Below, one piece after another: positions 5,027 to 63,098 of a stretch of DNA of 64,000 nt. How positions within the stretch are numbered: position 1 is the first letter of the stretch; each line of letters starts with the position of its first letter. The stretch spans positions 20,002,782 through 20,066,781 of the forward strand of contig NC_085842.1 in assembly GCF_035594765.1 (NCBI RefSeq). Reading direction: 5' to 3'. A program made the translations under genes and the position numbers. The DNA comes from Anolis carolinensis (Eukaryota). The notes under the pieces are model-generated. The model was not told the DNA's origin and searched no databases. It saw only the letters and a program-made list of their open reading frames with translations.

Positions 5027-6091
5027 GGGAAGCTTTAGCATTGAACGGTTGTGTTAAAGTGCAAAGTATGGAACCCTGCGCGGATGGGGAAGCGTAGCAT
5101 TGAACAGTTGTGTTGTTAAAGTGCGAAGTATGGAACCCTGCGCAGATGGGGAAGCCTTAGCACTGAACGGTTGTGTTGTTAAAGTGCGAAGTATGGAACC
5201 CTGCACAGATGGGGAAGCCTTAGCACTGAACGGTTGTGTTGTTAAAGTGCGAAGTATGGAACCCTGCGCAGATGGGGAAGCCTTAGCACTGAACGGTTGT
5301 GTTGTTAAAGTGTGAAGTATGGAACCCTGCGCAGATGGGGAAGCCTTAGCACTGAACGGTTGTGTTGTTAAAGTGCGAAGTATGGAACCCTGCGCAGATG
5401 GGGAAGCCTTAGCACTGAACGGTTGTGTTGTTAAAGTGCGAAGTATGGAACCCTGCGCAGATGGGGAAGCCTTAGCACTGAACGGTTGTGTTGTTAAAGT
5501 GCGAAGTATGGAACCCTGCGCAGATGGGGAAGCCTTAGCACTGAACGGTTGTGTTGTTAAAGTGCGAAGTATGGAACCCTGCGCAGATGGGGAAGCCTTA
5601 GCACTGAACGGTTGTGTTGTTAAAGTGCGAAGTATGGAACCCTGCGCAGATGGGGAAGCCTTAGCACTGAACGGTTGTGTTGTTAAAGTGCGAAGTATGG
5701 AACCCTGCGCAGATGGGGAAGCCTTAGCACTGAACGGTTGTGTTGTTAAAGTGCGAAGTATGGAACCCTGCGCAGATGGGGAAGCCTTAGCACTGAACGG
5801 TTGTGTTGTTAAAGTGTGAAGTATGGAACCCTGCGCAGATGGGGAAGCCTTAGCACTGAACGGTTGTGTTGTTAAAGTGTGAAGTATGGAACCCTGCGCA
5901 GATGGGGAAGCCTTAGCACTGAACGGTTGTGTTGTTAAAGTGCGAAGTATGGAACCCTGCGCAGATGGGGAAGCCTTAGCACTGAACGGTTGTGTTGTTA
6001 AAGTGCGAAGTATGGAACCCTGCGCAGATGAGGAAGCCTTAGCACTGAACGGTTGTGTTGTTAAAGTGTGAAGTATGGAACCCTGCGCAGA
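5027..6091 (+). repeat. 63-bp minisatellite, about 17 copies
   Basis: Unit GAAGTATGGAACCCTGCGCAGATGGGGAAGCCTTAGCACTGAACGGTTGTGTTGTTAAAGTGC. Confidence 0.97.
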
Positions 6092-11692: not shown

Positions 11693-12516
11693 TCAGCAAA
11701 TGCTGAGTTTCATGTGGCAGCTTCTCTTGGTATGGACTCTCTGATGTAAAGTTAGGCTGTAACTTTGGCTGAAGCCCTTCCTGCACACGGGACAGGTGTA
11801 CGGTTTCTCTCCAGTGTGGATTCTTTTATGTCTGGAAAGGTTGGATTGGTCACGGAAACTCTTGCCACATACAGAGCAGGTATATGGCTTCTTCCCCGTG
11901 TGCATTTTTTGGTGCTCAATGAGCACTGATTTGTCGGTGAAGCTCTTGCTGCAATCTGGGCAGCGGTGTGGTTTTTCCTCCATGTGAATCTCCTGATGCC
12001 TAAGCAAGTGGGCACTCCGGACAAAGCATTTCCCACATTCCAAGCACTGATAAGGCTTCTCTCCCGTGTGGATTATTTGGTGTGACTTCAGATTGTCCTT
12101 CCGACCAAAGCATTTCCCACACTCCAAACATTTATACACCTTCTCCCCTTTTTGGATCCCTGGACGCTTAATCTTATCAGGATCCGAATTCATACATGGG
12201 TTCTCATCTGCAGAAATATTTTGATTCAAGTGTATGCTGGAACTCGTCCCATCATAAAGCATTTCACATTCAGTAATGCTTCCACTCTGATTGAAGGTCT
12301 TTTCAAACATTAAATCTTTTTTGTCCTCAGAGCAAACTGAGATTTTGTGGGAGTTTCCCACATGAAATGGGAAGTATTTGGCTGCCGGTTCTTTCGTGTG
12401 GCTTCCGTCTTGGCTCACTGGGCCTTCTTGGCTCCAAGCATTCTCCTCCAATGCTTCACACTCTGTTCTTTCTGGGGAATCCTCACCTAGTTGCCCCTCA
12501 CTTTTCCATTTATCAC
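11693..12516 (-). CDS. Gene A terminal exon: 5 C2H2 zinc fingers (spliced protein 558 aa)
   Basis: tttatttccaacag|GT acceptor; five CxxC-x12-HxxxH fingers with TGEKPY-type linkers. Confidence 0.92.
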
Positions 12517-14402: not shown

Positions 14403-14529
14403 CCAAAAGTCCAGCATCCCCGCCATCATCTTCCTGTTTGATCTCCACACTAAGCTTCTTCTGCTCAATCTCAGGCAGGGCTTGGCCAACTTCAGGGGAA
14501 CCCACCGTCTCCTCTTCCTCTAATGACAT
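14403..14529 (-). CDS. Gene A coding exon 2: 127-nt degenerate KRAB-A-like exon
   Basis: ttttag|ATG acceptor, TTG G|gtaaga donor; phase 0 to 1 links the SCAN and ZF exons in frame; conserved in all six paralogs. Confidence 0.85.
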
Positions 14530-15080: not shown

Positions 15081-15806
15081 CTGGTTCGCCTGAGGCCTGG
15101 ACTCTCGCTGCTTCTGGAGGAAGTCCTCCGCCAAGGCCACGGCCTGGGAGCAAGTCTCTAGACCACATTCCTTGACCCAGGCCTCTATCTCTGGAGGCAG
15201 GATGGCCAAGAACTGCTCCAAGACCAGCAGCTCCAGGATCTGCTCCTTCGAATGCCTTTCAGGTTTCAGCCACTGGCAACACAGCTCCTGAAGCTGGCTG
15301 TATGCTCCTTTTGGCCCCTCAGCCTCCCTGTAGCAGAACCGCCGGAAACACTGTCGCTGCTCCTCCCTCCGCATGGCATCTCCGTGCAAGATGGCGGCCT
15401 TCACTTTCCCATAATCCTCCCTGTCTTTGGCCTCCAGGCCGGTGAAGGCCCGCTTGGCCTCTCCGCTCAATGCTGGCAGGAGCCGGGGCACCCACTCTTC
15501 CTTGGGCCACCGGCAGGCTTGGGCCACTTGCTCAAAGGAGGCCAGGAAGGCTTTGGCGTCGCCCCACGGCTCCTCCCTCAACTGAGGGGCCTCCCTGTTT
15601 GGGTGAGGGCCTTCCACACTCTTCAGGAACTCCTGCAATTTGGTTTCCCACTGCTGAAGCGAGTCTTTGTCGGGTTCCTGTTCCACATCTGTAGGTCTCC
15701 TTTGAAGGAATGCCTCCGTCGTTCCAACATGGCAGCTCCCTCTCACTTCCCATGACACCTGCCCTGGTATAAGACTTGTAAGGTTTTTTTGGGTCTCCAT
15801 TTTCAT
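15081..15806 (-). CDS. Gene A coding exon 1: extended SCAN (Gag capsid-like NTD + SCAN) of an ESCAN-zinc finger protein
   Basis: ORF MKMET...[23 protein letters not shown]...RQCFRRFCY...[34 protein letters not shown]...QAVALAEDF (SCAN signature); donor CAG|gtgagg at 15080; 726 nt, phase 0. Confidence 0.92.
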
Positions 15807-18398: not shown

Positions 18399-20143
18399 CT
18401 CTCGTGGTGTCTTCTTGGTAAGGTCTCTCGTGGCGTCTTCTTGGTGAGGTCTCTCGTGGCGTCTTCTTGGTGAGGTCTCTCGTGGCGTCTTCTTGGTGAG
18501 GTCTCTCGTGGCGTCTTCTTGGTGAGGTCTCTCGTGGCGTCTTCTTGGTGAGGTCTCTCGTGGCGTCTTCTTGGTGAGGTCTCTCGTGGCGTCTTCTTGG
18601 TGAGGTCTCTCGTGGCGTCTTCTTGGTGAGGTCTCTCGTGGCGTCTTCTTGGTAAGGTCTCTCGTGGCGTCTTCTTGGTAAGGTCTCTCGTGGCGTCTTC
18701 TTGGTAAGGTCTCTCGTGGCGTCTTCTTGGTAAGGTCTCTCGTGGCGTCTTCTTGGTGAGGTCTCTCGTGGCGTCTTCTTGGTGAGGTCTCTCGTGGCGT
18801 CTTCTTGGTAAGGTCTCTCGTGGCGTCTTCTTGGTAAGGTCTCTCGTGGCGTCTTCTTGGTGAGGTCTCTCGTGGCGTCTTCTTGGTAAGGTCTCTCGTG
18901 GCGTCTTCTTGGTAAGGTCTCTCGTGGCGTCTTCTTGGTAAGGTCTCTCGTGGCGTCTTCTTGGTGAGGTCTCTCGTGGCGTCTTCTTGGTGAGGTCTCT
19001 CGTGGCGTCTTCTTGGTGAGGTCTCTCGTGGCGTCTTCTTGGTGAGGTCTCTCGTGGCGTCTTCTTGGTGAGGTCTCTCGTGGCGTCTTCTTGGTGAGGT
19101 CTCTCGTGGCGTCTTCTTGGTGAGGTCTCTCGTGGCGTCTTCTTGGTGAGGTCTCTCGTGGCGTCTTCTTGGTGAGGTCTCTCGTGGCGTCTTCTTGGTG
19201 AGGTCTCTCGTGGCGTCTTCTTGGTAAGGTCTCTCGTGGCGTCTTCTTGGTAAGGTCTCTCGTGGCGTCTTCTTGGTAAGGTCTCTCGTGGCGTCTTCTT
19301 GGTAAGGTCTCTCGTGGCGTCTTCTTGGTAAGGTCTCTCGTGGCGTCTTCTTGGTAAGGTCTCTCGTGGCGTCTTCTTGGTGAGGTCTCTCGTGGCGTCT
19401 TCTTGGTGAGGTCTCTCGTGGCGTCTTCTTGGTGAGGTCTCTCGTGGCGTCTTCTTGGTAAGGTCTCTCGTGGCGTCTTCTTGGTAAGGTCTCTTGTGGC
19501 GTCTTCTTGGTAAGGTCTCTCGTGGTGTCTTCTTGGTGAGGTCTCTCGTGGCGTCTTCTTGGTAAGGTCTCTCGTGGCGTCTTCTTGGTAAGGTCTCTCG
19601 TGGCGTCTTCTTGGTAAGGTCTCTCGTGGCGTCTTCTTGGTAAGGTCTCTCGTGGCGTCTTCTTGGTGAGGTCTCTCGTGGCGTCTTCTTGGTGAGGTCT
19701 CTCGTGGCGTCTTCTTGGTGAGGTCTCTCGTGGCGTCTTCTTGGTAAGGTCTCTCGTGGCGTCTTCTTGGTGAGGTCTCTCGTGGCGTCTTCTTGGTGAG
19801 GTCTCTCGTGGCGTCTTCTTGGTGAGGTCTCTCGTGGCGTCTTCTTGGTGAGGTCTCTCGTGGCGTCTTCTTGGTGAGGTCTCTCGTGGCGTCGTCTTCT
19901 TGGTAAGGTCTCTCGTGGCGTCTTCTTGGTAAGGTCTCTCGTGGCGTCTTCTTGGTGAGGTCTCTCGTGGCGTCTTCTTGGTGAGGTCTCTCGTGGCGTC
20001 TTCTTGGTGAGGTCTCTCGTGGCGTCTTCTTGGTAAGGTCTCTCGTGGCATCTTCTTGGTAAGGTCTCTCGTGGCGTCTTCTTGGTAAGGTCTCTCGTGG
20101 CGTCTTCTTGGTAAGGTCTCTCGTGGTGTCTTCTTGGTAAGGT
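18399..20143. repeat. 26-bp minisatellite, about 67 copies
   Basis: Unit CTCTCGTGGCGTCTTCTTGGT(A/G)AGGT. Confidence 0.98.
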
Positions 20144-20537
20144 TTCTTCCAAGAAATTCACTTTACCAGAACCTTCCTCTGAGGCTGAGAGAGTGGGGCT
20201 TGCCCAAGGTGAGTTCCCCTGGTTGGGGTCCTAGTTTTCCAGTCCAAAGCAGAAAACCTATGATCCTGGGATACAAGCCTGTCTGGAAGGGCCTACACAT
20301 AGGCTTAAGGTCCTCAAGATTAATGGAGGAAACCCATGAATCAAACCCTTGCAATGGGAACGCTGGAATGCAGAAATAGCCCCGTGAGGGTTGAACACGC
20401 TCAGGAGGCACACAATGGGATCGGTTTGGGGAGAGAAGAGATTCAGCAACTAGGTTAAACGTTAAGCTTATTATACTGTTAGAATTCACAGTAATCACAA
20501 AAAATATGATATGGGTTTTGTACAGTTTCTCTTAAAT

Positions 20538-22091: not shown

Positions 22092-23218
22092 TTAGGAGTA
22101 CGGTTTCCCTCTGGTGTGGATTCTCTTATGTCTGACAAAGGTGGACCGGTCATTGAAACTCGTATTGCATTCTGTACACTTATAGGACTTCTCTCCAGTG
22201 TGAATCTTCTGGTGTTTCTTGAGATGGGCACTCTGACCAAAGCATTTCCCACACTCCAAACACTGATACGGCTTCTCCCCAGTGTGAATTCTCTGGTGTG
22301 ACGTGAGGTTGCCCTTCTGACCAAAGCATTTCCCACACTCCAAGCACTGATACGGCTTCTCTCTGGTGTGGATTCTCTTATGTCTGACAAAGGTAGACCG
22401 GTCACTGAAACTCTTATTGCATTCTGTACATTTATAAAGCTTCTCCCCAGTGTGAATTTTCTGATGTGACTTGAGAGAGTAACTCCAACCAAAGCATTTC
22501 CCACACTCCAAGCATTGATACGGCTTCTCCCCAGTGTGAATCTTCTGGTGTGACGTGAGGCTGCCCTTCAGACCAAAGCATTTCCCACACTCCAAGCACT
22601 GATACGGCTTCTCTCTGGTGTGGTGTCTCTTATGTCTGAGAAAGGTGGTCTGGTCACTGAAATTCATATTGCATTCTGTACATTTATAGGGCTTCTCCCC
22701 AGTATGAATCTTTTGGTGTGACATGAGGTTGGCCTTCTGACCAAAGAATTTCCCTCTCTCCAAACGTTTAAACAGCTTTTTCCCTTTTGGGATCCCTGGA
22801 TGGTTCATCTTACCAAGATCCGAATTCATACACTGTCTCTCATCTGCAGGAATATTTTGATTCAGGTATATGTTGGAACTTGTCCCTTCATAAAGCGTTT
22901 CACATTCAGTGAGGCTTCCATTCTGATTTAATGTATTTGCAAACATTAAATCTGATTCATTCTCAGGGTGAAGTCTACTAAGAACACTGGAGAAAGCGGC
23001 CCCCTTTTTTTCTTCCTTGCTTTCCTGCTGGATTGAGATTTCGTGGGAGTCTCCCACCTGAAAGGGGAAGGATTTGGCTTCCAGCTCTTTCGTGTGGCTT
23101 CCATCTTGGCTCGCAGCCCCATCTTGGCTCCAAAAATTCTCCTTTAATGCTTCACACTCTGTTCTTTCTGGGGAATCCTCACCTGGTTGCCTCTCATTCT
23201 CACTTTTCCTTTCATCGC
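22092..23218 (-). CDS. Gene B terminal exon: 1 degenerate + 7 intact C2H2 fingers (spliced protein 661 aa)
   Basis: caacag|GC acceptor; first finger lacks both Cys (KRLERG); TAA replaces the first Cys of a final relic finger. Confidence 0.9.
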
Positions 23219-43611: not shown

Positions 43612-44621
43612 TTATAGGGCTTCTCCCCAGTGTGAATGCTTCTCTCCAGTGTGAATCTTCTGGTGTTTCTTGAGATTGGCACTCTGACTAAAGCATTTCC
43701 CACACTCCAAACACTGATACGGCTTCTCCCCTGTGTGAATTTTCTGGTGTGTCTTGAGGGTGGCCCCCTGCCCAAAGCATTTCCCACACTCCAAGCACTG
43801 ATACGGCTTCTCTCTGGTGTGGATTCTCTTATGTCTGATAAAGGTAGACTGGTGACTGAAACTCTTTCCGCACTCTGTACATTTATAGGGCTTCTCCCCA
43901 GTGTGAATCTTCTGGTGTGTCTTGAGACTGTTACGCCGACCAAAGGATTTCCCACATTCCAAGCACTGATACGGCTTCTCCCCGGTGTGGATTATCTGGT
44001 GCGACTTGAGATGAGCACTCTGACCAAAGCATTCCCCACATTCCAAGCACTGATATGGCTTTTCCCCGGTATGGATTATCTGGTGTGACTTAAGATGGGC
44101 CTTCTGACCAAAGCATTCCCCACACTCCAAGCACTGATACGGCTTCTCACCGGTGTGGATTCTCTTATGGGAAGTAAGGTGTGAACTCCAACCAAAGCAT
44201 TTCCCACACTCCAAACATTTAAACAGCTTCTTCCCTTTTGGGATCCTTGGATGGTTCATTTTACCAAGATCTGAATTCATACACTGTCTCCTATCTGTAG
44301 GAATACTTTGATTCAGGGATATGTTGGAACTTGATGTATTTGCAAACATTAAATCTGATTCATTCTCAGGGTGAAGTCTACTAAGAACACTGGAGAAAGC
44401 AGACCCCTTTTTTTCTTCCTCGCTTTCCTGCTGGATTGAGATTTCTTGTGAGTCTTCCACCTGAAATGGGAAGGACGTTTCTTCCGGCTCTTCCGTGTGG
44501 CTTTCATCTTGGCTCACTGGCCCATCTTGGCTCCAAAAATTCTCCTTCAATGCTTCACTCTCTGTTCTTTCTGAGGAATCCTCACTTAGTTGTCCCTCAT
44601 TCTCACTTTTATTTTCATCAC
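43612..44621 (-). CDS. Gene D terminal exon: 7 intact C2H2 fingers, then frameshift (spliced protein 620 aa)
   Basis: caacag|GT acceptor; doubled linker ATTCACACTGGAGAGAAGC-ATTCACACTGGGGAGAAG shifts frame; two more finger units lie out of frame downstream. Confidence 0.88.
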
Positions 44622-45620: not shown

Positions 45621-45747
45621 CCAAGAGTGCAGCATCCCCATCGTCATCTTCCTGTTTTGTCTCCACACTAAGCTTCTTCTGCTCCATCTCAGGCAGGGCT
45701 TGGACACCTTCAGGGGAAACCACCATCTCCTCTTCCTCTAACGACAC
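45621..45747 (-). CDS. Gene D coding exon 2: 127-nt degenerate KRAB-A-like exon
   Basis: ttttag|GTG...TTG G|gtaaga; 127 nt. Confidence 0.85.
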
Positions 45748-46287: not shown

Positions 46288-47013
46288 CTGGTTCGCCTGA
46301 CGCCTGGACTCTCGCTGCTTCTGAAGGAAGTCCTCTGCCAAGGCCACCGCCTGGGAGCAAGTCTCTGGACCACATTCCTTGACCCAGGCCTCTATCTCTG
46401 GAGGCAGGACGGCCAAGAACTGCTCCAAGACCAGCAGCTCCAGGATCTGCTCCTTCGAATGCCTTTCAGCTTTCAGCCACCGGCAACACAGTTCCTGAAG
46501 CTGCCCGTAAGCACTTCTTGGCCCCTCGGCCTCCCGGTAGCAGAAACGCCGGAAACACTGCCGCTGCTCCTCCCTCCGCATGGCATCTTCGTGCAAGATG
46601 GCGGCCTTCACTTTCCCATAATCCTCCCTGCCTTCGGCCTCCAGGCCAGTGAAGGCCCGCTTGGGCTCTCCGCTCAATGCTGGCAGGAGCCGGGGCACCC
46701 ACTCTTCCTTGGGCCACCGGCAGGCTTGGGCCACTTGCTCAAAGGAGGCCAGGAAGGCTTTGGCGTCATTCCACGGCTCCTCCCTCGACTGAGAGGTGCC
46801 CCAGTTTGGGTGAGGGCCTTCTAGGCCCTTCAGGAACTCCTGCCATTGGGTTTCCCACTGCTGAAGAGAGTCTTTGTTGGGCTCCTGTTTCACCTCCGTT
46901 GGTCTCCTTGGCAGGAATGCCTCCGTCGTCCCAACATGGCAGCTCCCTCTCACTTCCCGTGACTCTTGCCCTGGTATAAGACTTGTAAGGTCTTCTCGGA
47001 TCTCCATTTTCAT
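46288..47013 (-). CDS. Gene D coding exon 1: extended SCAN
   Basis: Paralog; CAG|gtgaag donor; 726 nt. Confidence 0.9.
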
Positions 47014-49443: not shown

Positions 49444-50621
49444 TTAAGGTGCTACTAGACTGATTGTTGGATTAGGTGGAGAGACTAACACAGTCATGCC
49501 AGTATTCAGCTGGTTATTCCCACTGATATTTGTGTGGCAGCTTCTTTGGCCGTGAATTCTTTGATGTAAAGTCAGGTTGGTACTTTGCCTGAATCCCTTC
49601 CCGCACTCTGCACAGGTGTACGGTTTCTCTCCGGTGTGGATTCTCTTATGTCTAACAAGGCTGGACTGATCACGGAAGCTCTTACCACATTCGGAGCAGG
49701 AAAATGGCTTCTCCCCTGTGTGAATCCGTTGATGGAAGCTTAGGCTTCCCTGGTGGCTGAAACTTTTTTCACACTCTATACATTTATAGGGCTTCTCCCT
49801 GCTGTGGATTACCTGGTGTGATTTGAGATGGGTACTCCGACCAAAGCATTTATCACACTCCAAGCATTGATACGGCTTCTCCCCAGTGTGGATTATCTCG
49901 TGTGACTTAAGATGGGCACTCCGGCCAAAGCATTTCCCACACTCCAAGCACTGATACGGTTTCTCCCCGGTGTGCATCTGTTGATGTAAGCTAAGGCTTC
50001 CATGGTGGCTGAAACCCTTTCCGCACTCTGTACATTTATAGGGCTTCTCCCTGGTGTGGAGTACCTGGTGTGACTTGAGATGGGCACTCCGACCAAAGCA
50101 TTTCCCACATTCGGAGCACTGGTACGGCTTCTCTCCTGTGTGAATTATCTGGTGAGACAAGAGATGGGTCTTCCGACCAAAGCATTTCTCACACTCCAAA
50201 CATTTATACAGCTTCTCCTCTTTTTGGATCCTTGGATGTTTCATCTTATCAGGATTTGAATTCATAAACTGTCTCTCATCTGCAGAAATACTTTGATTCC
50301 AGTATATGTTGGAACCTGTCCCTTCAGAAAGTGTTTCACATTCACTGGATTTGTCCTCAGAGTGAATTCTCCAATGAACTGTGGGGAAAGCAGTCTCATT
50401 TGTTTCTTTCCATCTTTCCTGCTGAACTGAGATTTTGTGGAAGTCTCCCAACTGAAATGGGAAAGATTCGGCTTTCACCTCCTCCAGGTGGCTTTCACTT
50501 CCTCCATTTTTGCTCGCTGGCCCGTCTTGGCTCCAAACATTTTCCTTCAATGCTTCACACTCTGTTCTTTCTGAGGAATCCCCACCTAGTTGCCCCTCAT
50601 TCTCACTTTTCAATTCATCAC
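49444..50621 (-). CDS. Gene E terminal exon: 8 intact C2H2 fingers (spliced protein 676 aa)
   Basis: caacag|GT acceptor; eight canonical fingers, open to the stop at 49444. Confidence 0.92.
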
Positions 50622-51668: not shown

Positions 51669-51795
51669 CCAAGGGTCCAGTATCCCCGTCGTCATCTTCC
51701 TGTTTGATCTCCACACTAAGCTTCTTCTGCTCCATCTCAGGCAGGGCTTGGACACCTTCAGGAGAACCCGCCGTCTCCTCTCCCTCTAACGGCAC
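51669..51795 (-). CDS. Gene E coding exon 2: 127-nt degenerate KRAB-A-like exon
   Basis: ttttag|GTG...TTG G|gtaaga; 127 nt. Confidence 0.85.
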
Positions 51796-52364: not shown

Positions 52365-53090
52365 CTGGTTTGCCTGCCTCCTGGCCTCTCGCTGTCTCTG
52401 GAGGAAGTCCTCCGCCAAGGCCACCGCCTGGGAGCAAGTCTCTGGACCACATTCCTTGACCCAGGCCTCTATCTCTGGAGGCAGGACGGCTAAGAACTGC
52501 TCCAAGACCAGCAGCTCCAAGATCTGCTCCTTCGAATGCCTTTCAGCTTTCAGCCACCGGCAACACAGTTCCTGGAGCTGCCCGTAAGCCCCTCTCGGCC
52601 CCTCGGCCTCCCGGTAGCGGAAACACCGGAAGCACTGCCGCTGCTTCTCCCTCCGCATGGCATCCCCGTGCAAGATGGCGGCCTTCACTTTCCCATAATC
52701 CTCCCTGCCTTCGGCCTCTAGGCCAGGGAAGGCCCGCTTGGCCTCTCCGCTCAATGCTGGCAGGAGCCGAGGCACCCACTCTTCCTTGGGCCACCGGCAG
52801 GCTTGGGCCACTTGCTCAAAGGAGGCCAGGAAGGCTTTGGCGTCGTCCCACGGCTCCTCCCTCGACTGAGAGATGCCCCAGTTTGGGTGAGGGCCTTCCA
52901 CGCTCTTCAGAAACTCCTGCCATTGGGTTTCCCACTGTTTAAGAGAGCCTTCGTCAGTTTCCTGTTTCACCTCCGCTGGTCTCCTTTGCAGGAATGCCTC
53001 CATTGTCGCAACATGGCAGCTCCCTCTCACTTCCCTTGGCACCTGCCCTGGTATGTGACTTATAAGGTGTTCCCGGGTCTCCATTTTCAT
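52365..53090 (-). CDS. Gene E coding exon 1: extended SCAN
   Basis: Paralog; CAG|gtgagg donor; 726 nt. Confidence 0.92.
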
Positions 53091-60783: not shown

Positions 60784-61515
60784 ATGAAAATGGAGACCCG
60801 GGAACACCTTACAAGTCACATACCAGGGCAGGTGCCAGGGGAAGTGAGAGGGAGCTGCCATGCTGGGACAACAGAGGCATTCCTGCAAAGGAGACAAATG
60901 GAGGTGAAACAGGAACCTGACGAAGGTTCACTTCAGCAGTGGGAAACCCAATGGCAGGAGTTCTTGAAGAGCTTGGAAGGCCCTCACCCAAACCAGGACA
61001 CCTCCCAGTCGAAGGAGGAGCCATGGGACGACACCAAAGCCTTCCTGGCCTCCTTTGAGCAAGTGGCCCAAGCCTGCCGGTGGCCCAAGGAAAAGTGGGT
61101 GCCCCGGCTACTGCCAGCTTTGAGCGGAGAAGCCAAGAGGGCCTTCATTGGCCTGGGGGCCGAAGGCAGGGAAGATTATGGGAAATTGAAGGCTGCCATC
61201 TTGCACGGGGATGCCATGCGGCGGGAGGAGCAGCGGCAGTGTTTCCGGCGTTTCCGCTACCGAGAGGCCAAGGGCCCGAGAGAGGCTTACGGGCAGCTTC
61301 AGGAACTGTGTTGCCGGTGGCTGAAAGCTGAAAGGCATTCGAAGGAGCAGATCCTGGAGCTGCTGATCATGGAGCAGTTCCTGGCCATCCTGCCTCCAGA
61401 GATAACAGCCTGGATCAAGGAATGTAGTCCAGAGACTTGCTCCCAGGCAGTGGCCTTGGCAGAGGACTTCCTCCAGAAGCAGTGTGAGCAAGAGTCCAGG
61501 AGGCAGGCAAACCAG
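60784..61515 (+). CDS. Gene F coding exon 1: extended SCAN (inverted paralog)
   Basis: MKMETREH...; CAG|gtgggt donor; 732 nt; polypyrimidine acceptor near 60680-60705. Confidence 0.9.
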
Positions 61516-62971: not shown

Positions 62972-63098
62972 GTGCAGTTAGAGGAAGAGGAGATGTCGGG
63001 TTCCCCTGAAGCTGGTCAAGCCCTGCCTGAGATAGAGCAAAAGAAGCTTCGTCTGGCGACCAAACAGGAAAATGACGACAGGAATGCTGGACCCTTTG
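62972..63098 (+). CDS. Gene F coding exon 2: 127-nt degenerate KRAB-A-like exon; ZF exon expected beyond the window
   Basis: ttttag|GTG...TTT G|gtaaga; 127 nt; downstream intron homologous to other paralogs up to the window end. Confidence 0.85.

What the first reader, a model, noticed from the sequence alone, without database searches (positions are those of the whole stretch)
14403..14529. Hidden 127-nt exon is a 'dead' KRAB-A exon kept in all six paralogs
Seen: an exon of exactly 127 nt, phase 0 to 1, ending L/F-G|gt, in all six genes (also 23900-24026, 34843-34969, 45621-45747, 51669-51795, 62972-63098). Established: this is the canonical size, phase and position of a KRAB-A exon. The translation aligns by eye: SLEEEETVGSPEVGQALPEIEQKKLSVEIKQEDDGGDAGLLG vs [40 protein letters not shown], and gene F keeps QEN..RN. 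The residues needed for KAP1/TRIM28 binding (DV, FS, EEW, LY, MxENY) are replaced. Inference: these are ESCAN-KRAB-ZF genes that abandoned KAP1 repression but kept the exon, now acidic, perhaps as an activation or linker module.
Basis: partly seen in the sequence, partly recalled or inferred. Interest (0 to 1): 0.78.

Follow-up and report, generated by a model that had tools for sequence, protein, structure and literature searches.

The report
KRAB-like acidic exon after SCAN
The 127-base piece is a real, already annotated exon of six lizard SCAN zinc-finger genes; it is a decayed distant relative of the KRAB-A repressor box, but it belongs to a separate exon family that sits upstream of the true KRAB-A exon in related lizard genes.

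Summary
The exon is real. All six copies are 127 nt, phase 0 to 1, with AG/GT splice sites. Five lie on the minus strand and one on the plus strand. It is already part of annotated Anolis carolinensis proteins, and RNA-type contigs show both of its junctions in gene A.

The KRAB idea is half right. The Anolis exons alone show no significant KRAB similarity (Pfam: none; hhalign P 0.02). They do belong to a squamate-wide "post-SCAN exon" family, here called exon M. The exon M profile matches canonical KRAB-A end to end (hhalign E 2e-11) and retrieves canonical KRAB-A boxes from 1.8 billion proteins.

Exon M is not the KRAB-A exon itself. Squamate SCAN-KRAB-ZNF genes carry both, in the order SCAN | M | linker | KRAB-A | ZF. 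The window's exons resemble that upstream M exon, not KRAB-A. The six genes lack the linker + KRAB-A cassette, and their introns hold no detectable relic of it.

In Anolis, exon M is strongly acidic and predicted disordered. Among the six paralogs dN/dS is about 1. The exon is needed to keep the zinc fingers in frame.

The finding is moderately interesting and is a new variant of a known kind.

The parts
14403..14529 (-). Exon M of gene A (127 nt, phase 0->1)
   Evidence: Reading frame and splice sites. Exon-family HMM E 6e-21. Both junctions seen in RNA-type contigs.
23900..24026 (-). Exon M of gene B (= P0001 residues 245-286)
34843..34969 (-). Exon M of gene C (donor gtacg)
45621..45747 (-). 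Exon M of gene D (= P0018)
51669..51795 (-). Exon M of gene E (= P0052)
62972..63098 (+). Exon M of gene F (= P0026; the same residues also occur in P0049)
15081..15806 (-). Gene A first coding exon (N-terminal extension + SCAN), 726 nt, ends in phase 0
   Evidence: Pfam SCAN E 3e-40; boundaries
11693..12516 (-). Gene A zinc-finger exon, starts in phase 1 and runs to the stop codon
   Evidence: Pfam zf-C2H2; acceptor ccaacag|; junction
24581..25312 (-). Gene B SCAN exon (732 nt)
22092..23218 (-). Gene B zinc-finger exon
35524..36255 (-). Gene C SCAN exon (732 nt)
32006..33147 (-). Gene C zinc-finger exon
46288..47013 (-). Gene D SCAN exon (726 nt)
43612..44621 (-). Gene D zinc-finger exon
52365..53090 (-). 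Gene E SCAN exon (726 nt)
49444..50621 (-). Gene E zinc-finger exon
60784..61515 (+). Gene F SCAN exon (732 nt); its downstream exon lies beyond the window
   Evidence: Pfam SCAN E 3e-38

Best explanation
The 127-nt segment is the middle coding exon of six tandem Anolis carolinensis SCAN-C2H2 zinc-finger genes, each built as SCAN exon | exon M | zinc-finger exon. Exon M belongs to a squamate-wide family of exons that directly follow the SCAN exon. That family is a remote but statistically solid homolog of the KRAB-A box over its whole length, and it has the same intron phases (0->1). It is a paralogous exon, not the KRAB-A exon itself. In squamate SCAN-KRAB-ZNF genes the order is SCAN | M | short linker exon (phase 1->0) | canonical KRAB-A (0->1) | zinc fingers. 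The window genes have M but lack the linker + KRAB-A pair. That pair is a phase 1->1 unit, so its absence keeps the reading frame. In Anolis, exon M has decayed into a 42-residue, strongly acidic (net charge -5 to -11), predicted-disordered spacer. The KAP1-contact positions are replaced and the KRAB helices are no longer predicted. What is shown: the exon is spliced in, and it is indispensable for reading frame, because skipping it runs the zinc-finger exon into a stop after 9 codons in gene A. This explains why every copy keeps an open 3n+1 exon with good splice sites while its residues drift (dN/dS about 1). What is inferred: the peptide acts as a flexible acidic linker between the SCAN dimerisation domain and the DNA-binding array, it does not recruit KAP1/TRIM28, and it may carry a weak effector or SUMO-acceptor function centred on the one well-kept motif, K-x-E followed by acidic residues.
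For: Gene structure, phases and splice sites come. The exon is present in annotated proteins. An iterated HMM finds the exon family in 96 of 124 squamate SCAN proteins. All 28 named exon-M-type hits of an exhaustive profile search are squamates, from geckos to iguanians. For homology to KRAB-A, the exon-M profile retrieves canonical KRAB-A boxes from 1.84e9 proteins, for example a single-domain P0267 at library E 8e-6 aligned over profile positions 2-45, and the turtle protein P0142 at E 1.7e-14. hhalign of A4 against A5 gives Prob 97.3%, E 2.3e-11 over 43 columns; column-shuffled controls reach at most 14 against a score of 50. KRAB is the family hit most often when the 82 exon-M members are scanned singly against Pfam (5 of 82, best E 0.012). 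For M being a separate exon, 10 of 10 proteins show SCAN, then M, then Pfam KRAB at E 1e-17 to 6e-25. The Sceloporus locus L001 has M at 118 nt, a linker at 86 nt and KRAB-A at 121 nt as distinct exons. The upstream M of those proteins is itself homologous to KRAB-A (E 9e-11). Anolis M matches upstream M (E 2.8e-5) but not KRAB-A (P 0.022), and 78 of 82 segments prefer the upstream-M HMM. A KRAB-A HMM finds nothing anywhere in the window's six-frame translation. On decay, AlphaFold2 gives exon M pLDDT 62 with no secondary structure, against pLDDT 89.7 with three helices for a lizard KRAB-A control. dN/dS is 1.02 (bootstrap 0.55-2.18) for exon M against 0.34 for the SCAN exon. K-x-E is kept in 145 of 170 family members.
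Against: The Anolis exons have no significant direct similarity to KRAB-A, so the link is transitive through other squamates. Some database proteins that show M plus KRAB-A are automatic gene models. Only one (Sceloporus) was checked at DNA level, and none by RNA. The direction of history (loss versus gain of the KRAB-A cassette, duplication versus fusion) is not resolved; the SCAN tree is weak and unrooted. Mammals, turtles, crocodilians and tuatara were not examined for an M-like post-SCAN exon. The functional part (linker, no KAP1 binding) is inference. AlphaFold2 disorder for a 45-residue peptide is weak evidence. The residue before the K of K-x-E is hydrophobic in only about a third of members.
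Confidence: 0.72

Rival explanations
1. One reading: exon M is the original KRAB-A exon of SCAN-KRAB-ZF genes, decayed in place after KAP1 repression was given up. A variant of this is that M was the ancestral KRAB-A, and a second linker + KRAB-A cassette was acquired later by some genes from KRAB-ZNF neighbours.
For: The exon has the same phase class, begins with V and ends L-G|gt, is 127 nt in the window, and is homologous to KRAB-A at family level. The order of events is not resolved here, and the KRAB label changes at least 5 times on the SCAN tree.
Against: Exon M and canonical KRAB-A coexist in fixed order in many squamate proteins and as separate exons in L001. The window's exons group with the upstream exon, not with KRAB-A. 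The decayed, acidic form is already shared by geckos and iguanians. So nothing was 'abandoned' in these six paralogs or in this subfamily.
Confidence: 0.13
2. Exon M is an unrelated acidic linker exon, and its likeness to KRAB-A comes from chance or composition.
For: Pfam gives no KRAB hit for the six exons even at E 10. The family profile finds no KRAB chain among PDB sequences. A KRAB-A HMM does not see the six exons. Anolis against KRAB-A is no better than shuffles. The sequence is of low complexity and rich in E/D.
Against: The family-level profile-profile E is 2e-11 with an end-to-end alignment in register, and shuffled and reversed controls stay far below it. Of 58 non-Anolis members, 39 hit a KRAB-A HMM individually at E<1. 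An unbiased library search pulls canonical KRAB-A boxes. The intron phases are shared.
Confidence: 0.05
3. Exon M is an active effector rather than a passive spacer: an acidic activation module like the acidic 'variant KRAB' activators of human ZNF473, ZFP28 and ZNF496, or a SUMO-dependent repression module using the K-x-E + acidic patch.
For: Net charge is -5 to -11 over 42 residues. K32 and E34 are the only nearly invariant columns across 82 squamate members. Human variant KRABs that activate are significantly more acidic, and SCAN-linked KRABs are mostly non-repressive (bioRxiv 10.1101/2020.09.09.288324). The exon has been retained for the whole squamate radiation.
Against: dN/dS is about 1 among the six paralogs. 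In-frame deletions of up to 4 residues are tolerated. The residue before K is T more often than a hydrophobic residue. Frame-keeping alone explains retention. No functional data exist.
Confidence: 0.2

Closest known systems
KRAB-A box (Pfam PF01352) of KRAB zinc-finger proteins
   Same: It shows remote sequence homology at family level over all ~42 positions, the same intron phases (0->1), a start at V-x-F/L-E-E and an end at L-G split by the intron, and a location N-terminal to a C2H2 array.
   Different: There is no Pfam match. The DV/EEW/MLE positions are replaced (MLE aligns with K-Q-E). No helices are predicted. It is strongly acidic. It is a separate exon lying upstream of the true KRAB-A in SCAN-KRAB genes.
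Variant (non-KAP1) KRAB domains of old SCAN- or DUF3669-linked mammalian KZFPs, and two-KRAB proteins such as ZFP28 (Tycko et al. preprint; Liu et al. 2014)
   Same: These are divergent KRAB relatives linked to SCAN. They are expected not to bind KAP1, the activating ones are acidic, and one divergent and one standard KRAB can sit in the same protein.
   Different: The mammalian variants are still recognised by Pfam KRAB, and their function has been assayed. Exon M is far more decayed, is squamate-wide, and is untested. No orthology to any mammalian gene is shown.
Mammalian ZSCAN-type genes (SCAN + C2H2 without KRAB)
   Same: They share the same overall architecture, and NCBI names the Anolis genes after them (ZNF397, ZSCAN22, ZNF391).
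   Different: Lizard SCAN-ZNF genes expanded independently and have no mammalian orthologs (PMC3971581). Whether the mammalian post-SCAN exon is related to exon M was not tested.
Anolis ESCAN/SCAN-ZF genes of Emerson and Thomas 2011 and the 89 SCAN / 240 SCAN-KRAB lizard models of Liu et al. 2014
   Same: They are the same gene family and the same genome.
   Different: The text of Liu et al. that I could read does not mention a KRAB-like exon between SCAN and KRAB-A. The Emerson and Thomas paper was not available.

Membership tests
KRAB-A box (PF01352) | Match to the Pfam KRAB model at or above the gathering score | tested here: not met
   The six exon translations give no KRAB hit even at E<=10. 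Among 82 squamate family members only 5 give weak hits, best E 0.012.
KRAB-A box (PF01352) | Profile-level homology to canonical KRAB-A | tested here: met
   Family level: hhalign Prob 97.3%, E 2.3e-11. Canonical KRAB-A boxes are retrieved from 1.84e9 proteins. Anolis copies alone are inconclusive: P 0.022, equalled by 2 of 30 shuffles.
KRAB-A box (PF01352) | KAP1-contact residues (DV at 6-7, MLE at 36-38; Margolin 1994 as cited in PMC3971581) | tested here: not met
   In the hhalign register, DV/EV aligns with E-E/E-T and MLE aligns with K-Q-E. Actual binding is not testable here.
KRAB-A box (PF01352) | Helical KRAB fold | tested here: not met
   AlphaFold2 on exon M gives pLDDT 62 with no secondary structure. 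A lizard KRAB-A control run by the same method gives pLDDT 89.7 with helices at 5-8, 14-18 and 22-42.
KRAB-A box (PF01352) | Being the KRAB-A exon of the gene (orthologous exon position) | tested here: not met
   SCAN-KRAB proteins carry exon M and KRAB-A together. They are separate exons in L001. Of 82 M segments, 78 fit the upstream-exon HMM better.
KRAB-A box (PF01352) | Exon phase 0->1 and size near 127 nt | tested here: met
   The window exon is 127 nt, phase 0->1. Lizard KRAB-A in L001 is 121 nt and M there is 118 nt, both 0->1. Size is therefore not diagnostic.
Squamate post-SCAN exon M family (defined here) | Directly follows the SCAN exon, phase 0->1, matches the family HMM, and has an acidic C-terminal half with K-x-E | tested here: met
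   HMM E 1e-17 to 4e-21 for all six copies. Position and phases. K-x-E is present in all six.
SCAN-C2H2 zinc-finger genes | Pfam SCAN domain plus a tandem C2H2 array in one gene | tested here: met
   SCAN E 3e-40 and zf-C2H2 E 2e-33 in gene A exons. The full-length annotated protein P0001 carries both.
Variant KRAB (non-KAP1-binding KRAB) | A KRAB relative that does not bind KAP1/TRIM28 | not testable with these tools
   Only the sequence-level loss of the contact motifs is shown. This needs co-IP or a recruitment assay.

The most novel reading that the evidence does not exclude
Exon M is an ancient tandem paralog of the KRAB-A exon, fixed before the squamate radiation, that was turned into a new acidic, disordered effector module (activating or SUMO-dependent). 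It is now carried by hundreds of squamate SCAN zinc-finger genes. Squamate SCAN-KRAB proteins would then be built with two opposed KRAB-derived modules.
Probability: 0.2. Interest if true: 0.6.

Novelty: new variant of a known kind. Interest (0 to 1): 0.45.

Why it matters
SCAN zinc-finger genes are one of the largest lineage-specific transcription-factor expansions in lizards. How their effector parts evolved is little known. Here nearly every squamate SCAN-ZNF gene sampled carries a cryptic KRAB-A-like exon right after SCAN, and true SCAN-KRAB genes carry it in addition to a canonical KRAB-A. This changes how these genes should be classified: Pfam-based counts see neither the relationship nor the tandem arrangement. 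It gives a natural series, from gecko and lacertid to Anolis, of a KRAB box decaying into an acidic disordered linker. It also cautions against reading 'kept in all paralogs' as selection on the peptide. Here frame-keeping and recent duplication explain the retention.

Tried and rejected
1. Pfam on the six exon translations at E<=10 gave no KRAB (one search failed on a frame slip).
2. The exon-family profile against all PDB chain sequences gave no KRAB chain, only a designed repeat protein at E 0.001 on a 14-residue stretch.
3. I looked for a relic KRAB-A exon in the introns. A KRAB-A HMM over the six-frame translation of the window gave a best E of 2.2, so nothing was found.
4. Paralog dN/dS as evidence of constraint gave about 1.0 with a wide interval (0.55-2.18). 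It offers no support for selection on the peptide.
5. The language-model look-alike search put KRAB clusters on top, but at score 0.77, below the tool's own reliability line. I kept it only as a lead.
6. The SCAN-domain tree, meant to order loss and gain of KRAB, has 93 columns, is poorly resolved and is unrooted. It shows only that the window clade is uniformly KRAB-less and that the label changed several times.
7. The Emerson and Thomas 2011 paper could not be read. The 'ESCAN' literature search returned noise.
8. P0244 had no contig on record; its longer isoform P0272 did.
Exons were searched separately by reference, and full-length context came only from database proteins returned by the tools.
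10. The strict SUMO consensus idea was weakened, because the residue before K is T in 61, and I, V or L in 57, of the 145 members that keep K-x-E.

Full report
**What is at the coordinates**

Each of the six intervals holds a 127-nt open segment (42 codons plus one base). Five are on the minus strand and 62972-63098 is on the plus strand. All six have a polypyrimidine-AG acceptor and a GT donor and end L/F-G|gt.

In gene A the upstream exon runs from the ATG at 15806 to 15081. It is 726 nt, ends CAG|gtgagg in phase 0, and encodes a Pfam SCAN domain (E 3e-40). The downstream exon starts at 12516 after ccaacag| in phase 1 and encodes C2H2 fingers. The same boundaries and phases hold in genes B to E, and for the first two exons of gene F.

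An HMM of the exon family scanned over the six-frame translation of the whole window finds these six places (E 1e-17 to 4e-21). Nothing else scores below E 0.3.

**Origin and annotation**

The window is Anolis carolinensis. Gene B is 99% identical to 'zinc finger protein 397 [Anolis carolinensis]' (P0001, 661 aa). That protein contains the exon at residues 245-286. Genes D, E and F likewise correspond to P0018, P0052 and P0026. So the exon is not hidden from annotation.

Exons were searched by reference, and full-length context came from proteins that the search tools returned.

**Transcription**

Contigs of RNA-type runs were laid on window:11650-15850. They carry a joint 14529->15081 (skips 551, GT..AG on the minus strand; two runs from two studies). 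They also carry a joint equivalent to 12516|14403 (skips 1886; a third run from a third study). These are exactly the two junctions that flank the exon in gene A. No SCAN-to-ZF joint that skips the exon was listed.

The runs are only guessed to be RNA. Intron-less contigs with canonical ends are nevertheless hard to explain otherwise.

**Conservation among the six copies**

Exon p-distance is 0.126, against 0.167 for the upstream intron flank. Pooled dN/dS is 1.02 (bootstrap 0.55-2.18). For comparison it is 0.34 for the SCAN exon and 0.52 for the pre-finger linker.

Retention in six paralogs is therefore what recent tandem duplication predicts. It is not evidence of selection on the peptide.

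There is a structural constraint. The SCAN exon ends in phase 0 and the ZF exon starts in phase 1, so a 3n+1 exon is needed between them. In gene A, skipping it would read GTG ATA AAT ... TAG and stop after 9 codons. Family members with in-frame deletions (38-41 residues) fit this picture.

**Is it KRAB-A?**

Directly, no. Four tests agree:
- Pfam gives no KRAB hit for the six exons at E<=10.
- A KRAB-A HMM built from 132 squamate KRAB-A boxes does not see them.
- hhalign of the Anolis-only alignment against KRAB-A gives Prob 2%, P 0.022.
- A profile search of PDB sequences finds no KRAB chain.

Through intermediates, yes. The segment that follows SCAN in other squamates forms a graded series towards KRAB-A. 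An iterated HMM finds it in 96 of 124 squamate SCAN proteins.

A profile of 82 such segments (A4) was searched against 1.84 billion representative proteins. It gave 253 hits at E<=0.001. Besides exon-M-type segments, these include many canonical KRAB-A boxes aligned over nearly the whole profile. One is a single-domain protein at library-wide E 8e-6. Another is a turtle protein with two KRAB-A boxes at E 1.7e-14.

Further support:
- hhalign of A4 against 70 canonical KRAB-A boxes gives Prob 97.3%, E 2.3e-11 over 43 columns.
- Column-shuffled controls reach at most 14 against a score of 50, and the reversed profile scores 10.6.
- 39 of 58 non-Anolis members hit the KRAB-A HMM individually at E<1.
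- KRAB is the family matched most often when members are scanned singly against Pfam (5 of 82).
- Anolis exon M is clearly homologous to the non-Anolis members (E 1e-16).

The chain Anolis M - squamate M - KRAB-A therefore holds.

**It is a different exon from KRAB-A**

Many hits carry both an exon-M-type stretch and, a median of 26 residues further on, a canonical KRAB-A.

- All ten such proteins tested with Pfam have SCAN, then the M stretch, then KRAB at E 1e-17 to 6e-25. They come from Sceloporus, Anolis sagrei, Elgaria, Hemicordylus, Varanus and others.
- In the Sceloporus undulatus gene for P0272 (locus L001) the units are separate exons:
  - the SCAN exon ends in phase 0;
  - exon M is 118 nt (0->1);
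  - a linker exon is 86 nt (1->0);
  - the KRAB-A exon is 121 nt (0->1);
  - the finger exon follows.
- The upstream M of these proteins (A6, 22 sequences) is itself homologous to KRAB-A (E 9e-11; shuffles at most 11).
- The Anolis exons match A6 (E 2.8e-5) but not KRAB-A.
- 78 of 82 post-SCAN segments score higher with the upstream-M HMM than with the KRAB-A HMM (medians 18.4 against 2.3 bits).

The window's exon is therefore the counterpart of the upstream KRAB-like exon. The six genes lack the linker + KRAB-A pair, a phase 1->1 unit whose absence keeps the frame. No relic of that pair is detectable in the window.

**Age and range**

All 28 named proteins with exon-M-type hits are squamates: geckos, skink, lacertids, cordylid, amphisbaenian, anguimorphs and iguanians. 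The decayed, acidic form therefore predates the six paralogs and the Anolis subfamily.

On a weak, unrooted SCAN-domain tree the window genes sit in a clade of 24 KRAB-less rows (support 95). KRAB presence changes at least five times. The direction of change is not resolved. Non-squamate amniotes were not examined for an M-like exon.

**State of the peptide**

The six copies carry 10-14 acidic and 2-5 basic residues.

In the hhalign register, the DV/EV, EEW and MLE positions of KRAB-A align with E-E/E-T, E-x-x-Q and K-Q-E. DV and MLE are the KAP1-contact clusters named in PMC3971581.

AlphaFold2 with the 82-sequence alignment gives pLDDT 62 and no secondary structure. A lizard KRAB-A run the same way gives pLDDT 89.7 and three helices.

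The only nearly invariant columns across the family are a K and an E two residues on, followed by acidic residues. K-x-E is kept in 145 of 170 members, but the preceding residue is T more often than a hydrophobic residue.

**Mechanism, with basis**

Shown:
- It is a real, spliced, frame-keeping exon.
- It is a remote KRAB-A paralog.
- The KAP1-contact positions and the predicted fold are lost.

Inferred:
- It serves as a flexible acidic linker between the SCAN dimerisation domain and the finger array.
- It does not recruit KAP1/TRIM28.

Possible but untested: an acidic activating or SUMO-linked role. The analogy is to the acidic variant KRAB activators and the two-KRAB protein ZFP28 in human (bioRxiv 10.1101/2020.09.09.288324).

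**Comparison with what is known**

Liu et al. 2014 counted 89 SCAN and 240 SCAN-KRAB zinc-finger models in Anolis and found no mammalian orthologs. The text I read does not describe a KRAB-like exon between SCAN and KRAB-A.

Variant, non-KAP1 KRABs linked to SCAN are known in mammals. Exon M is a more extreme, squamate-wide case and a separate exon family. I rate it a new variant of a known kind, of moderate interest.

Its interpretation is partly supported: the remote homology and the loss of KAP1 residues hold, while 'the KRAB-A exon kept after abandoning KAP1' does not.

Noticed in passing
window 60784-61515 and 62972-63098 (gene F); proteins P0049, P0051: Gene F's SCAN exon is 244/245 identical to the N-terminus of P0049. 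P0049 is an older NCBI prediction of 1152 aa in which SCAN and the gene-F exon M are joined to a BED zinc finger and a hAT transposase dimerisation domain. Anolis sagrei has a protein of the same build (P0051). UniProt P0026 instead joins the same exons to C2H2 fingers. This could be a SCAN-transposase fusion gene or alternative 3' exons; the downstream part lies beyond the window.
   Followed up: partly
window 18399-20147: There is a very regular 26-nt tandem array (67 copies, 98% matches) with extreme AT skew (-0.59) and GC 0.55. It lies between genes A and B and creates spurious 558-589 aa ORFs.
   Followed up: no
window 5027-6091: There is a 63-nt tandem array (17 copies, 97% matches). It gives a 411-aa repeat ORF with meaningless weak Pfam hits.
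   Followed up: no
window 22099-22765, 32112-32675, 43638-44235, 49707-50218: The finger arrays of genes B-E show a 252-nt (three-finger) higher-order period on top of the 84-nt finger period. This suggests array growth by three-finger blocks.
   Followed up: no
proteins P0031, P0037, P0038, P0045 (gecko and iguanian 'ZKSCAN7-like'): These carry SCAN, a weakly M-like exon, a linker, and then a third segment that hits the lizard KRAB-A HMM only weakly (E 1e-4 to 5e-4) and Pfam not at all. This is a second, independent-looking case of KRAB decay in the canonical KRAB-A position.
   Followed up: partly
proteins P0125, P0041, P0126, P0127, P0130, P0131: Many squamate gene models hold 2-5 repeated SCAN-M or KRAB-A units in one protein. 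They may be read-through models across tandem genes or true multi-unit genes; this was not resolved.
   Followed up: no
window 60898-60927, 52947-52973, 25175-25198: A second V-K-Q-E + acidic motif sits near the N-terminus of each SCAN exon. It gives weak hits with the exon M HMM (E 0.35 to 17).
   Followed up: no
window 14523 (loose ends in runs X4, X10): Some contigs run from the start of exon M of gene A into sequence that reads as the end of a paralog's SCAN exon (...QANQ|V). This indicates that paralogous transcripts are spliced in the same way.
   Followed up: no
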